Shown here piece by piece: positions 21,057-25,346 of a stretch of DNA of 64,000 bases (positions are counted from its first letter, which is position 1; the number at the start of each line of letters is the position of its first letter). The translations under genes were made by a program, and so were the position numbers. The notes under the pieces were generated by a model that was not told the origin of the DNA, made no database searches, and worked only from the letters and a program-made list of their open reading frames with translations. The DNA is from Auanema rhodensis (lineage: Eukaryota > Animalia > Nematoda). Location of the stretch: NCBI GenBank assembly GCA_964057225.1, contig OZ059896.1, positions 11,222,001-11,286,000 on the forward strand, given 5' to 3'.

Positions 21057-22906
21057 TTATCCAATTTTTTCAGCGACTAGCGCGTAATTTACAATACTAC
21101 TAGAAGTCCATATCCATTGATTTCCAATGATATCATATGTAAAACCACCAATTGATCTGAAAAACAAGAATTGTTGATTGATTGATAAACATTTGCACTT
21201 GCTTCACTCTACATCCATTGCGGTTGAGACAGACAGACAATTCATCAGGTGTTACGAATTTTTGCCATTCATGAACACCTTTGGGTACAATTTTCAAAAT
21301 GTCCTTTAAAAATTAATGATATTAAAAGGAAAAAAAAACTAGTTACCTCAGCCAACCAAATAGCAGCAGCTTTGCTCGCAAATGTACGGTTAATTGTTGT
21401 GAAGAAAAGCGACCCTCCAACTTTCGTCATTTCCGCGCAGGCTCCCACAAAAGAATCGATATCGGCAACATGTTCCAGAATTTCAGAAGCAATAACTGCA
21501 TCAAAACCTTAAATATAAATATAAAAATATGAATTTACAAAATAAAATTAAAGAGAAAGGGACGCAGACAGGCAGGATATATCGATGATGGCGCTGAGTT
21601 GGGTGGCGCGGGCACCAATTGAGCGGACACGGCGATCGATACAACAAAACAGCGAAAAAGGAGTGCATACACAAGACAGCGTAACCCAATTTATGACAGA
21701 AACGAAAATCTATTAATGAACGCTTTGTCATCTAGATCATCACAAGTTTTTCATAATATAAATTTCTTTGAATTGTATAATGAATTATTAAAAAAATAGT
21801 TGAATAGTAGTGACAGGCAAACATTAAAAAATAGTACGCGCACAACACACCAAATGTGTAAGCGTTCGCATAGTAGCTTGATTGGGGTGGATGGTTCGCG
21901 ACTAACAAATTACTTCTTTAGACATAATAATAAAATATCAAGCTGTAAATCAAATTGTTCGGAATGTGATCTGTATTTTAAAACTTCGTTTCTAATTCAC
22001 TCTTAAAACAGCTAAACAAATAAAAGCGCTTTTAGAGAAAATCGATTGATTATTGAAATATCTATTTTTCTTCTTCAACCAGCACATCGATCGAGTTAAT
22101 GCTACTGTTTCTGCAGAGACAATTCCACAAAAATGTTGAATAGAGCAAAATTAAATTTACGTTATGAACTATATCTTGCTACTTTCGAAGCAAAGAAATT
22201 AATCTATATATAAATATATGATATAATACTGTATGTGCGCTACAAGGATCATTAGAAATATAATAGATGAAGGCGCGTAATAATGCATGACCTACAATTT
22301 TGATCTATTTGGGAATGAAACAACGTATAAAGTAAGTAAACAAAGTTTTATACAATATAGTTCTGATCTCAGGAATGCTTTTCATATATAATATAGTGTA
22401 CTTACTATTTCTATTACTAACAGCGAACTCTTCAGCTGTACAACTATGATATTGTACGCGGTTGGAAATTCCTGAATATTTTAAGCTTGGTAGCTCTAGG
22501 GATTTCTTTGCAACTGCAATCTAAATTTGATGAATCTTATTTTTTGTACGATTAAGAATTGGATATACTCCGTCAGGGGCAGCGTCTATTCCAGTAACAT
22601 GGTGGCCACATCTAGCTAAAGGCACAGATAAAATACCACCGCCACAACCGACATCTAAAACACTGCTCTCTTTTCTCTGAAAGTTAAGAAATTCTCATGA
22701 ATACAATTGATAAATACCAGCTGGTTTTTTAAAATCCAAGGAACTCTTAGCTTATTCAAAGAATGCAGTGCTTTGAAAGGACCATCCTCATCTCCCCAGT
22801 GAGAAGCTAAATGACTAAAACGTTCAATTTCCGCCTTATCAACTGATGAAGAAATATTGCTTATTTGTATTTTATGAATAGCTCGCGCTAAGCGAAGAGT
22901 TTTCAT
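21057..22906 (-). CDS. coq-3: Ubiquinone biosynthesis O-methyltransferase (898-nt intron 21508-22405; GC-AG last intron 21157-21202)
   Basis: [39 protein letters not shown] motif [51 protein letters not shown]. Confidence 0.93.
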
Positions 22907-23067
22907 GCTATAATGGATTGTGTACGATAAACACTGGAACGTTTAAATAATTAAAGTGGCGAAAACCTGTATAACTCGAGACTACTCATGTTTTATTTCA
23001 GAATTCAAATACTGACAAAAATCTACAACTTCTTAACTGTTGCTAACTAAACACAAAAGGCTAGAAT

Positions 23068-23549
23068 TTATTCTTTTCCTCTAAGGAACTTGGAAAGGAA
23101 ATCTTTAGGCTTAGCTTCAACATTTTCACGGAACAAATAGTTGCGAACGTGGTCAGTGTTGTAAAAAGCATAACGGATCGAATATATATGCTGAAAAATT
23201 AATTTTGAGCAAAACTATTAGTGACAAAAATTACCTGTTTAGTTTCACCAACAAGTCTATCAACAACGCGAATGTCGGTCAAATGAGCATTTTTGGTGAA
23301 CTGTTGCTTAAGCACCGAACGAAAAACCCCTAAAGGCATATCCTGGAGCCCAAAATCCCACCAAAATTTAGGAGTCAAACGTTGACTACGATAATAAGTT
23401 TAAATAAATTTAAAAGGAAAAGAGACATACAGTTCCTTATACACTTGAAGAACAGAATGACGAGCTTGTTCTTTAGTTACTGATTGAACAGGAGCAACGG
23501 TGCGTGCGACTCCCGCACCTGCACGAACAATTTTTCCACTGGCAGACAT
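23068..23549 (-). CDS. nuo-3: Complex I subunit NDUFA6 (LYR family)
   Basis: MSASGKIVRAGAGVARTVAPVQSVTKEQARHSVLQVYKEL|QRLTPKFWWDF...HLTDIRVVDRLV...PKDFLSKFLRGKE*. Confidence 0.92.
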
Positions 23550-23950
23550 TACGACAAAGTATCACCACGAGTCACCTAAAAATAGCATTATTATTTTAAT
23601 TTTATTGTGATTTGAATAAACTTTACCTTAGCTTCTAGAAATTCAACCTTTCTTTCAAGAAGGCTTAGTTTATCAGAGAGCGTTGAAATCTTGCTACGGC
23701 AAGATAATTCTAAAATTCAAGTTATAGACAAGTGTGGAATCAGAAATTATACCAAAACTGGACAAAAAGTTTGAGATGCTCTTTATGTTATCAGCAATTA
23801 TCTGAAGAATAATATATAAATACAATTTCTTTCTTATTTATAACATGAAAATTTGTTTCCAGAGCAAAACTTATTACAAACCTGAACGTATTCTCTATTG
23901 TCCCAATCGTCCCGAAGCTGCCTCTGAACAGTTCCTACTCCAGGGTGCAT
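23549..23950 (-). CDS. brk-1: BRICK1/HSPC300, WAVE complex subunit (4 coding exons; stop overlaps nuo-3 ATG)
   Basis: MHPGVGTVQRQLRDDWDNREYVQ|IIADNIKSISNFLSSFE|LSCRSKISTLSDKLSLLERKVEFLEAK|VTRGDTLS*; the DWxNREY, SCRSK and LEA-x-V motifs are those of BRICK1. Confidence 0.92.
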
Positions 23951-24009
23951 CCACCTTAAATTTTTATCATTCAATAATACTTTACATTTTATTTTTTTTG
24001 TAATCTTAC

Positions 24010-24090
24010 CAGGTAGAGGAAACTTGTGATAGCGACAGCGAGCGCGTTTTCTGAAGGAGTCATGTCAGCGCTTGAGTCGTTCGTGTCAGG
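24010..24090 (-). promoter_or_regulatory. Putative promoter and non-coding first exon of brk-1
   Basis: GC-rich patch (AGCGAGCGCG, GAGTCA) followed on the minus strand by a CTG|GTAAGA donor ~55 nt before the brk-1 acceptor. Confidence 0.4.
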
Positions 24091-24208: not shown

Positions 24209-25346
24209 TTAGTGAGAAGCAAAAAAAAGTTTCTTTACATTTTTCACTTTTTGCCTGCATGTCGAGAATGGGCATTGTTCGTTTTCTAGCATTTCCAATT
24301 CATGAGCAATTGTACAGCTAAATTTAAGTAAAGTACTCGTATACAAAATAGTTATATCTTCCTACCAGCACGGTAGCAGTAAGAATAGTGTTTGGTCCAT
24401 TACGCAGTGATCTATCGGGCAAAACCCATCCCTCAGTTTTATGTTGTTTTGCGGTTCTTAAATAAATTAAATCACAACACCAATAAGACTTATTCAAGAC
24501 CTTTCATCTTTTGGCATATAGGACAGTTTGAAGAAGTTATTTTTTCAGCATCGGATTTACATAAAAGATGACCACAGGCTAGAACTATCATCTACAAGAG
24601 AAATTTTTTTTCATTATTTTCAATTTCGCAACCTTGTGAGCAAGATATTGTTCTAAGCATATAGCACACTCGAAGTGTTTTCTTGTCCGCAATAGTTTAG
24701 TAGATGAATACCCGGCAAAGGCTATCTCATCAAAAACCATAAAGCCTTTCTGAAGCTTATTTGAAAATTTTAATTATGGGTGACTTACTATGTTATCAAC
24801 TATGACGAGGGTTCTGCAGGACGGAATGCCTAATAAATACCATTTTGACCGGAGTTTCTTAGAAACACCTTTGAAAAAAAATCTAAAACATGATATAAAC
24901 GAGAGTGATAAGATTATACAACCTCACTCCTAATTGATTCTCCATTTTGAGGTGAAATTGAATTTGTAAGAAATCATTTTTTCGAGCTTCGAGATCGTTT
25001 AAGAAATCTCTCCTGATAAAACAATGAACGTGTTTCAACGTATAGTAGTAATACCTTTATATAAGTATACCTGAACATGATAAACTCTTTCAAGAAATAT
25101 TTTGAAAAATCTTCTGAGCTACTTGGTGCGAGATCAACTGAGTTGATGTTTCTTGGTAAAATTCCCATGATTGGAATTTTATCATAATCTTTCTATAATA
25201 ACAGTTGAATAAGGAGTTAAGCTTATGAATATTGCCTGAAATACGATGTAAACAGAACAGCACGGCTTCATAATCAGATTTAATTCCGGTTGTATAATTG
25301 AAATTTCCATTTTCGGATTCTCAATTGTATGGTCCCACACTTCCAT
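24209..25346 (-). CDS. RING-finger protein (one RING-HC variant plus a second degenerate RING-like module)
   Basis: Spliced C-terminus FECAICLEQYLAHK|MIVLACGHLLCKSDAEKITSSNCPICQ...CPIDHC...LPCCCT...QCPFSTCRQKVKNVKKLFFASH*. The start codon is uncertain. Confidence 0.7.

What the first reader, a model, noticed from the sequence alone, without database searches (positions are those of the whole stretch)
23540..23630. brk-1 stop overlaps nuo-3 start (TAATG): a gene pair with no intercistronic DNA
Seen on the minus strand: tttag|GTG ACT CGT GGT GAT ACT TTG TCG TAA/ATG TCT GCC. The BRICK1 stop (23549-23551) shares one base with the NDUFA6 ATG (23547-23549), leaving no room for a poly(A) site or a separate trans-splice site. 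A complete brk-1 mRNA must therefore run into nuo-3. Inference: nuo-3 is made by termination-reinitiation on a dicistronic mRNA and/or by trans-splicing to brk-1's last acceptor (26-nt leader), which would cut brk-1. That would couple an actin-nucleation regulator to a complex I subunit. I recall C. elegans HSPC300 being annotated within the nuo-3 locus, which would indicate conservation.
Basis: partly seen in the sequence, partly recalled or inferred. Interest (0 to 1): 0.82.

Follow-up and report, generated by a model that had tools for sequence, protein, structure and literature searches.

The report
Two genes on one worm mRNA
In this roundworm the small actin-regulator gene BRK1 ends on the very start codon of the mitochondrial complex I gene NDUFA6. 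RNA data put both on one spliced message, and the layout is kept across distant roundworms with marks suggesting that ribosomes skip the first start codon to reach the second.

Summary
On the minus strand the BRK1/HSPC300 stop (TAA, 23551-23549) shares one base with the NDUFA6/nuo-3 ATG (23549-23547), inside one 145-nt exon (23575-23431).

Spliced RNA contigs from four runs carry a 5'UTR exon, BRK1, NDUFA6 and a 3' end near 22975 with no differing letters, so this is not an assembly indel.

The end-to-end layout is ancient. The gap between stop and start is -1 to +24 nt in 12 nematode sequences of clades III, IV and V plus two environmental contigs. C. elegans has +2 and already annotates brk-1 beside nuo-3 (formerly NUO-3A).

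- The BRK1 ATG has T at -3 in 10 of 11 sequences with a defined start; the NDUFA6 ATG has a purine at -3 in 12 of 12.
- Almost no ATG in any frame lies between the two starts.
- Caenorhabditis lacks the "26-nt leader" acceptor, and no TURBS-like motif is present.

Leaky scanning on a dicistronic mRNA is the best-supported route. Reinitiation and an extra trans-spliced nuo-3 mRNA are not excluded, because only contigs could be laid, not raw reads.

The scan noted similar pairs elsewhere in this genome.

The parts
24010..24050 (-). Non-coding 5'UTR exon of the brk-1/nuo-3 transcript. Its 3' end at 24010 (donor GTAAGA) is shown; its 5' start at the CCTTCAG acceptor (24050) is inferred.
   Evidence: the 12-letter loose end of the X2 contig at 23955 matches genomic 24022-24011; donor and candidate acceptor located; the exon has no ATG.
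23882..23954 (-). BRK1 exon 1. The ATG is at 23950-23948 in the context GTGG-ATG-C, with T at -3.
   Evidence: (joint 23801/23882).
23753..23801 (-). BRK1 exon 2.
   Evidence: joints 23709/23753 and 23801/23882.
23627..23709 (-). BRK1 exon 3.
   Evidence: joint 23573/23625, cut +2, which is intron 23576-23626.
23431..23575 (-). Shared exon. It holds the last 27 nt of the BRK1 CDS (23575-23549, VTRGDTLS*) and the first 119 nt of the NDUFA6 CDS (23549-23431). The TAATG overlap is at 23551-23547.
   Evidence: the exon lies inside one contig in each of the four runs.
23235..23385 (-). NDUFA6 exon 2.
   Evidence: joints 23385/23431 and 23190/23235.
22975..23190 (-). NDUFA6 exon 3 (CDS ends with TAA at 23070-23068) plus the 3'UTR. 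AATAAA lies at 22997-22992 and contigs end at 22975-22985.
22404..22909 (-). Start of the downstream coq-3 gene. Acceptor AG is 22909-22908 and the ATG is at 22906. This is a conventional operon partner, about 160 nt after the nuo-3 stop.
   Evidence: coq-3 contigs stop exactly at 22909 in X2-X4, and the X1 contig runs on from nuo-3 into coq-3; coq-3 is downstream in other nematodes.

Best explanation
brk-1 (BRK1/HSPC300, a WAVE complex subunit) and nuo-3 (NDUFA6, a complex I subunit) are expressed from one mature dicistronic mRNA of about 0.75 kb. It consists of a 5'UTR exon, the BRK1 ORF, the NDUFA6 ORF starting on the last base of the BRK1 stop, and a 3'UTR. This transcript is the first unit of a conventional operon whose next gene, coq-3, is separated in the usual nematode way.

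NDUFA6 is translated mainly by leaky scanning. Many 43S complexes pass the BRK1 AUG, which sits in a poor context (U at -3). They meet no other AUG in any frame for 227 nt and then initiate at the NDUFA6 AUG, which has a purine at -3.

The strength of the first AUG would set the ratio of the two proteins. Termination-reinitiation at the adjoining stop and start may add a minor share.

Shown: the overlap, the exon structure, contiguity in RNA assemblies, conservation, the start contexts and the ATG depletion.
Inferred: that single molecules carry both ORFs to the ribosome, and the scanning mechanism itself.
For: (1): in each of four runs one spliced contig covers BRK1 exons 1-4 and NDUFA6 exons 1-3 up to a poly(A)-signal-proximal end, with zero mismatches. 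The 27-nt BRK1 tail and the NDUFA6 start lie in one exon, so any complete brk-1 mRNA contains the nuo-3 start.

(2): all five C. elegans RNA contigs that encode NUO-3 have the BRK-1 ORF, whole or cut by the contig's end, directly upstream. One 747-nt contig carries BRK-1 at 43-267 and NUO-3 at 270-665.

(3): the stop-to-start gap varies as follows.
- -1: window, Auanema
- +1: L016
- +2: C. elegans, C. remanei, B. xylophilus
- +5: S. carpocapsae, L010
- +6: Loa loa
- +8: L015
- +9: L012
- +24: L011

(4): the BRK1 ATG has T at -3 in 10 of 10 sequences, as TGA/TGG-ATG; L015 has G. The NDUFA6 ATG has A or G at -3 in 12 of 12. The C. elegans optimum is AAAAUG, and context correlates with translational efficiency there (PMC5580712).

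(5): there are no ATGs between the two starts in 8 of 11 sequences with a defined BRK1 start. The other three share one ATGAATG that opens only a 4-13-codon ORF.
- Base composition predicts 3.3-5.4 ATGs per sequence.
- The NDUFA6 CDS has 1-9 ATGs per about 390 nt.
- With the protein sequence fixed, P(no ATG) is 0.07-0.6 per lineage. The product over six distant lineages is about 1e-4.

(6) Natural control: where BRK1 is not followed by NDUFA6 (M. graminicola L009 and the Meloidogyne-like L017), BRK1 has 1 and 2 internal ATGs, and -3 is C and A.

(7) The same two signatures define green-algal bicistrons, which were shown by mutation to use leaky scanning (PMC11291117).
Against: - No single-molecule or raw-read data could be laid. 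Contigs are assemblies and clip short spliced-leader tips, so an additional trans-spliced nuo-3 mRNA cannot be excluded.
- With the amino-acid sequence held fixed, ATG depletion is only modest per species (expected about 1 ATG).
- The lineages are not fully independent.
- One linked sequence (L015) has G at -3 of the BRK1 ATG.
- The only unlinked controls come from one lineage (Meloidogyne).
- Leaky scanning alone does not require the stop and start to stay within a few nucleotides for hundreds of millions of years. That tightness fits reinitiation, or simply deletion bias together with ATG avoidance.
- No translation data were available.
Confidence: 0.55

Rival explanations
1. Termination-reinitiation. 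Ribosomes translate BRK1, terminate at UAA, and the 40S subunit restarts at the overlapping or adjacent NDUFA6 AUG, so NDUFA6 output depends on BRK1 translation.
For: The stop and start overlap (UAAUG) or lie within +1 to +9 nt in 11 of 12 linked sequences across clades III-V. Such tightness is typical of coupled restart and is not required by leaky scanning.
Against: - ORF1 is 74-82 codons long, and restart after long ORFs is generally inefficient without a tethering element.
- The only UGGGA lies 182-207 nt upstream, inside the conserved DWD codons, so no TURBS-like motif is present.
- It leaves the weak BRK1 context and the ATG-free ORF unexplained.
- It would make an abundant complex I subunit sub-stoichiometric to BRK1.
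- One species has a 24-nt gap (L011).
Confidence: 0.2
2. Most NDUFA6 comes from a separate monocistronic mRNA. It would be made by spliced-leader trans-splicing to the last brk-1 acceptor (exon start 23575, 26-nt leader) or from an internal start, and the dicistronic RNA would serve mainly as the brk-1 mRNA.
For: A good TTTTTAG acceptor lies 26 nt before the ATG in the window, and the same intron is present in Auanema, B. xylophilus, Loa and Steinernema. Nematodes trans-splice widely. Logan contigs cannot show 22-nt leader tips. The 24-nt spacer of L011 holds AATAAA and a TCAG.
Against: - C. elegans and C. remanei have lost that intron, and their nearest acceptor is about 110 nt upstream.
- There is no AG in the last 26 nt in the window.
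- All C. elegans RNA contigs with NUO-3 carry BRK-1 upstream.
- ATG avoidance extends over the whole BRK1 ORF and the BRK1 start is weak, and neither is needed under this model.
Confidence: 0.2
3. Artefact. The overlap is an assembly indel, or brk-1 uses another last exon or an internal poly(A) site, so no dicistronic RNA exists.
For: None found.
Against: Four RNA runs give the same junction with no indels or substitutions. The BRK1 C-terminus VTRGDTLS aligns to the end of human BRICK1. The same layout occurs in 11 other sequences. No AATAAA lies on the minus strand between 23549 and 23073, that is, inside nuo-3 upstream of its stop.
Confidence: 0.02

Closest known systems
C. elegans brk-1 (Y57G11C.1147) / nuo-3 (Y57G11C.12) locus
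   Same: It is orthologous. BRK-1 (74 aa) ends 2 nt before the nuo-3 ATG, with coq-3 downstream. HSPC300 was long listed as NUO-3 or NUO-3A (PMC3521709, PMC5132145), and later as Y57G11C.1147 (bioRxiv 10.1101/2022.11.29.518248) and brk-1 (PMC7962252).
   Different: The window has a true one-base overlap and keeps a last mini-exon that Caenorhabditis lost. I found no paper in the held library that discusses how the two proteins are made from this locus.
Green-algal bicistronic mRNAs translated by leaky scanning (Duenas et al., PMC11291117)
   Same: Two unrelated conserved proteins sit on one mRNA, with a weak Kozak-like context at ORF1 and depletion of start codons before ORF2.
   Different: This case is in an animal that otherwise resolves polycistrons by trans-splicing. 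The spacer is near zero. The mechanism here is inferred from sequence and was not tested by mutation.
Viral termination-reinitiation at UAAUG (established knowledge: influenza B M1/BM2, calicivirus VP1/VP2)
   Same: The stop and start overlap as UAAUG, and the downstream ORF is in another frame.
   Different: No UGGGA/TURBS motif lies within about 100 nt upstream. ORF1 carries leaky-scanning signatures that the viral systems do not need.
Nematode SL2-type operons, and SL1-type operons with no intercistronic space (established knowledge; Blumenthal and colleagues)
   Same: The pair lies at the head of an operon. The nuo-3 to coq-3 junction looks like a standard SL2-type junction: AATAAA, then about 85 nt, then the acceptor.
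   Different: Between brk-1 and nuo-3 there is no room for a 3' end signal or an acceptor, because the coding regions themselves touch or overlap.

Membership tests
BRK1/HSPC300 (WAVE regulatory complex subunit) | Protein of about 75 aa that aligns end to end with BRICK1 of the solved WAVE complex. | tested here: met
   E=1.9e-24 to 3P8C chain E, residues 7-74 of 75; 77-83% identity to nematode proteins named BRICK1.
NDUFA6/LYRM6 (complex I accessory subunit) | Full-length similarity to NDUFA6 chains of solved complex I structures, and an LYR-family domain. | tested here: met
   E=1.3e-14 to 5e-10 against 16 NDUFA6 chains over residues 2-128. Pfam Complex1_LYR scores 22.6 bits, just under the 24.8 cut-off.
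Leaky-scanning bicistronic mRNA | Both ORFs lie on one mature mRNA. | tested here: inconclusive
   spliced contigs carry both ORFs in about 8 taxa, and a shared exon forces contiguity. Contigs are not single molecules, however, and no long reads were available.
Leaky-scanning bicistronic mRNA | Weak start context at ORF1 and a stronger one at ORF2. | tested here: met
   T at -3 of the BRK1 ATG in 10 of 11 sequences; a purine at -3 of the NDUFA6 ATG in 12 of 12 (A in 11).
Leaky-scanning bicistronic mRNA | Depletion of AUG in all frames between the two start codons. | tested here: met
   0 internal ATGs in 8 of 11 sequences, and one shared ATG at +4 in the other three. Expectation is 3.3-5.4 by base composition and about 1 with the protein fixed. 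The unlinked Meloidogyne BRK1 genes have 1 and 2.
Leaky-scanning bicistronic mRNA | ORF2 output rises when the ORF1 start is weakened and falls when it is strengthened. | not testable with these tools
   Needs reporter or CRISPR experiments.
Termination-reinitiation (TURBS type) | Stop and restart codons overlap or lie within a few nucleotides. | tested here: met
   the gap is -1 to +9 nt in 11 of 12 sequences.
Termination-reinitiation (TURBS type) | An upstream 18S-complementary motif (UGGGA) within about 100 nt of the restart site. | tested here: not met
   the only TGGGA is 182-207 nt upstream, and Loa loa has none.
Nematode operon junction resolved by trans-splicing | A 3' end signal for the upstream gene and a trans-splice acceptor between the two coding regions. 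| tested here: not met
   the coding regions overlap, there is no AG in the 26 nt before the ATG, and there is no AATAAA in the last brk-1 exon. The nuo-3/coq-3 junction does meet this feature. Spliced-leader reads themselves could not be examined.

The most novel reading that the evidence does not exclude
The brk-1/nuo-3 pair is an obligately dicistronic animal mRNA that predates the split of nematode clades III, IV and V. A deliberately weak first AUG and an AUG-free first ORF set the ratio of an actin-nucleation subunit to a complex I subunit. It would be one member of a small class of unresolved dicistrons embedded in otherwise trans-spliced nematode operons; other candidates noted in this genome are TMEM242/PIG-L and a Gly-rich ORF/DB-module gene.
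Probability: 0.45. Interest if true: 0.65.

Novelty: new member of a known kind. Interest (0 to 1): 0.55.

Why it matters
Nematodes are the textbook case of animals that cut polycistronic transcripts into single-gene mRNAs by trans-splicing. A gene pair that has stayed uncut across the major nematode clades, with marks of tuned leaky scanning, shows a second and older-style way of making two proteins from one message in the same genomes.

It also has practical consequences:
- In C. elegans, RNAi against nuo-3 (used in ageing and mitochondrial studies) or against brk-1 (used in WAVE-complex studies) should destroy the shared mRNA. Phenotypes assigned to one gene may therefore come partly from the other.
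- Gene predictors fuse the two ORFs into chimeric proteins in many public nematode proteomes.
- The pair is a ready natural model for testing start-codon context rules in worms.

Tried and rejected
- Raw-read evidence for spliced leaders or poly(A) ends. Only Logan contigs were on offer for the four runs, and no SL1/SL2 string occurs in any fetched contig. Leader use at 23575 therefore stays untested.
- TURBS-like motif search: negative.
- The human internal Met (FDMSCRS against nematode FELSCRS) as a sign of ATG avoidance. Rejected, because Dictyostelium Brk1 also has FELS.
- Synonymous-codon shuffles. They give only modest per-species support, and I report them as such.
- Literature search for a described brk-1/nuo-3 dicistron or for worm leaky-scanning dicistrons. 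Patel et al. 2008 could not be opened.
- The metagenome scan gave only two more loci.
- No locus from clade I/II nematodes or from a close outgroup was obtained, so the age of the layout beyond clades III-V is open.
- Pfam gave no hit for BRK1. Identity rests on the PDB and homologue matches.

Full report
**Observation**

- BRK1/HSPC300 is encoded by four exons: 23950-23882, 23801-23753, 23709-23627 and 23575-23549. The product is 75 aa.
- Its TAA (23551-23549) shares base 23549 with the ATG (23549-23547) of NDUFA6/nuo-3.
- NDUFA6 is encoded by 23549-23431, 23385-23235 and 23190-23068. The product is 130 aa.
- BRK1 matches human BRICK1 of the solved WAVE complex at E=1.9e-24 over residues 7-74, including the C-terminal VT(R/K)G(D/E)TL motif. 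The stop is therefore at the ancestral protein end.
- NDUFA6 matches solved complex I NDUFA6 chains and nematode orthologues at up to 85% identity. The best hit is Auanema sp. JU1783, so the window comes from a rhabditid related to Auanema.

**RNA evidence**

Four public runs of the same, coded organism hold about half of the sampled words of the locus. Their contigs lack all introns, so they are cDNA.
- In each run one contig of about 0.7 kb runs from 23955 through all BRK1 and NDUFA6 exons to 22975-22985. That end lies just downstream of AATAAA at 22997-22992.
- No differing letters and no indels were found, so an assembly indel is excluded.
- One contig carries 12 further letters that match genomic 24022-24011. 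This reveals a short non-coding 5' exon ending at 24010.
- The last 27 nt of BRK1 and the first 119 nt of NDUFA6 lie in one exon (23575-23431). Every complete brk-1 mRNA therefore contains the nuo-3 start.
- The next gene, coq-3, starts 160 nt further on. Its contigs stop exactly at the acceptor (22909), and in one run a contig runs through the spacer. This is the usual picture of a trans-spliced operon junction.
- Contigs cannot show spliced leaders or single molecules. Whether some nuo-3 mRNAs are trans-spliced at 23575 therefore stays untested.

**Conservation**

Gene predictors fuse the two ORFs into chimeric proteins in Heligmosomoides, Necator, Cylicocyclus, Oesophagostomum, Mesorhabditis, Caenorhabditis auriculariae and Bursaphelenchus.

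I fetched genomic loci and RNA contigs and modelled the BRK1 exons. The gap between the BRK1 stop and the NDUFA6 ATG is:

| Gap (nt) | Sequences |
|---|---|
| -1 | window, Auanema |
| +1 | environmental contig L016 |
| +2 | C. elegans, C. remanei, B. xylophilus |
| +5 | Steinernema carpocapsae, contig L010 |
| +6 | Loa loa |
| +8 | L015 |
| +9 | L012 |
| +24 | L011 |

- coq-3 follows in most of these sequences.
- The layout therefore predates the split of clades III, IV and V.
- It is absent in Meloidogyne graminicola and in a Meloidogyne-like contig, where BRK1 stands alone.
- In C. elegans the literature calls HSPC300 NUO-3 or NUO-3A (PMC3521709, PMC5132145), later Y57G11C.1147 and brk-1 (bioRxiv 10.1101/2022.11.29.518248; PMC7962252). 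The locus as such is therefore annotated.
- All five C. elegans RNA contigs that encode NUO-3 have the BRK-1 ORF, whole or cut by the contig's end, directly upstream.

**Mechanism**

Three features argue for leaky scanning.
1. The BRK1 ATG is preceded by TGA or TGG (T at -3) in 10 of 10 named or clade III-like sequences; only L015 has G. The NDUFA6 ATG has a purine at -3 in 12 of 12, and A in 11. The C. elegans optimum is AAAAUG, and context correlates with translational efficiency there (PMC5580712).
2. ATGs are scarce between the two start codons.
   - There is no ATG in any frame in 8 of 11 sequences with a defined start. The three clade III-like contigs share one ATGAATG, whose second ATG opens only a 4-13-codon ORF.
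   - In the window's mRNA model the ATGs lie at 46 (BRK1) and 273 (NDUFA6), and then at 438, 487, 562 and 610.
   - Base composition predicts 3.3-5.4 ATGs. NDUFA6 coding regions have 1-9 per about 390 nt.
   - With the protein sequence fixed the expectation is only about 1 per gene, and P(0) is 0.07-0.6. The product over six distant lineages is about 1e-4, with the caveat of incomplete independence.
3. Where the linkage is lost (Meloidogyne), BRK1 has 1 and 2 internal ATGs and a different -3 base.

The same pair of signatures defines green-algal bicistrons, for which leaky scanning was shown by mutation (PMC11291117).

**Rivals**

Termination-reinitiation fits the tight stop-start spacing. It does not explain the three features above, it follows a 74-82-codon ORF, and it lacks a UGGGA motif near the junction.

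Trans-splicing to the last brk-1 acceptor is possible in this species. It cannot be the conserved mechanism, because Caenorhabditis has lost that intron and the 26 nt before the ATG hold no AG.

My weights are: leaky scanning as the main route about 0.55, reinitiation about 0.2, a separate trans-spliced mRNA as the main source about 0.2, and artefact about 0.02.

**Comparison and novelty**

The locus is known as an annotation in C. elegans. Bicistronic translation by leaky scanning is a known kind of system.

What I did not find described in the held library:
- the conservation of the zero-gap layout across nematode clades;
- the sequence signatures that point to leaky scanning;
- the natural control in Meloidogyne.

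I therefore rate this as a new member of a known kind, of moderate interest. Earlier notes of this scan list two further stop-to-start pairs in the same genome (TMEM242/PIG-L, and a Gly-rich ORF/DB-module gene). Those are unchecked by me and hint at a class.

The neighbouring tin-9.2/exos-4.1 overlap in this window looks different. Its acceptor lies 1 nt before the ATG, and tin-9.2 has internal Met codons. That suggests alternative cis/trans use of one acceptor rather than scanning.

**Limits**

- No raw reads, long reads, ribosome profiling or proteomics were available.
- No clade I/II nematode or outgroup locus was obtained.

Noticed in passing
The acceptor ctttcag lies 1 nt before the ATGATG of exos-4.1 (RRP41-like), and the upstream Tim9-like exon has in-frame Met codons. 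Unlike brk-1 it is not ATG-free, so alternative cis/trans splicing of one acceptor seems more likely than leaky scanning.
   Followed up: partly
window 22404-23190 (minus strand): nuo-3 and coq-3 form a conventional operon junction. AATAAA is at 22997-22992 and the acceptor AG at 22909-22908. One RNA contig (X1) runs through the spacer while three others stop at the acceptor. The order brk-1, nuo-3, coq-3 (then a GDI gene) is kept in Auanema, Caenorhabditis, Bursaphelenchus and Steinernema.
   Followed up: partly
window 25193-25235 (minus strand): The upstream RING-finger gene has a GC-AG intron. The joint 25192/25236 has ends CT..GC on the plus strand, seen in three runs. That gene's contig depth is about 30 times lower than that of the brk-1/nuo-3 contig.
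   Followed up: no
window 24061-24063 (minus strand): An ATG lies just upstream of the candidate CCTTCAG acceptor of the 5'UTR exon. If transcripts start further upstream and are not trans-spliced there, it would open a uORF that overlaps the BRK1 start out of frame.
   Followed up: no
P0002, P0009, P0013, P0017, P0020, P0027, P0030: Public nematode proteomes hold chimeric BRK1-NDUFA6 predictions of 167-198 aa. They were made by forcing a splice or a frame change across the junction, so they are annotation errors caused by the zero-gap layout.
   Followed up: yes
L016:1-330: In this environmental RNA contig the BRK1 frame has no in-frame ATG. The only ATG upstream of NDUFA6 (position 87) is out of frame. 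Possible causes are a contig indel, an unspliced piece or a non-AUG start; this is unresolved.
   Followed up: partly
L009 and L017: In Meloidogyne graminicola and a Meloidogyne-like contig, BRK1 is not followed by NDUFA6, so the linkage was lost in that lineage.
   Followed up: partly
L011:249-272: The 24-nt spacer of this clade III-like contig holds two AATAAA motifs and a TTCTCAG just before the NDUFA6 ATG. In that species the pair might be on the way to a resolved, SL1-type junction.
   Followed up: no
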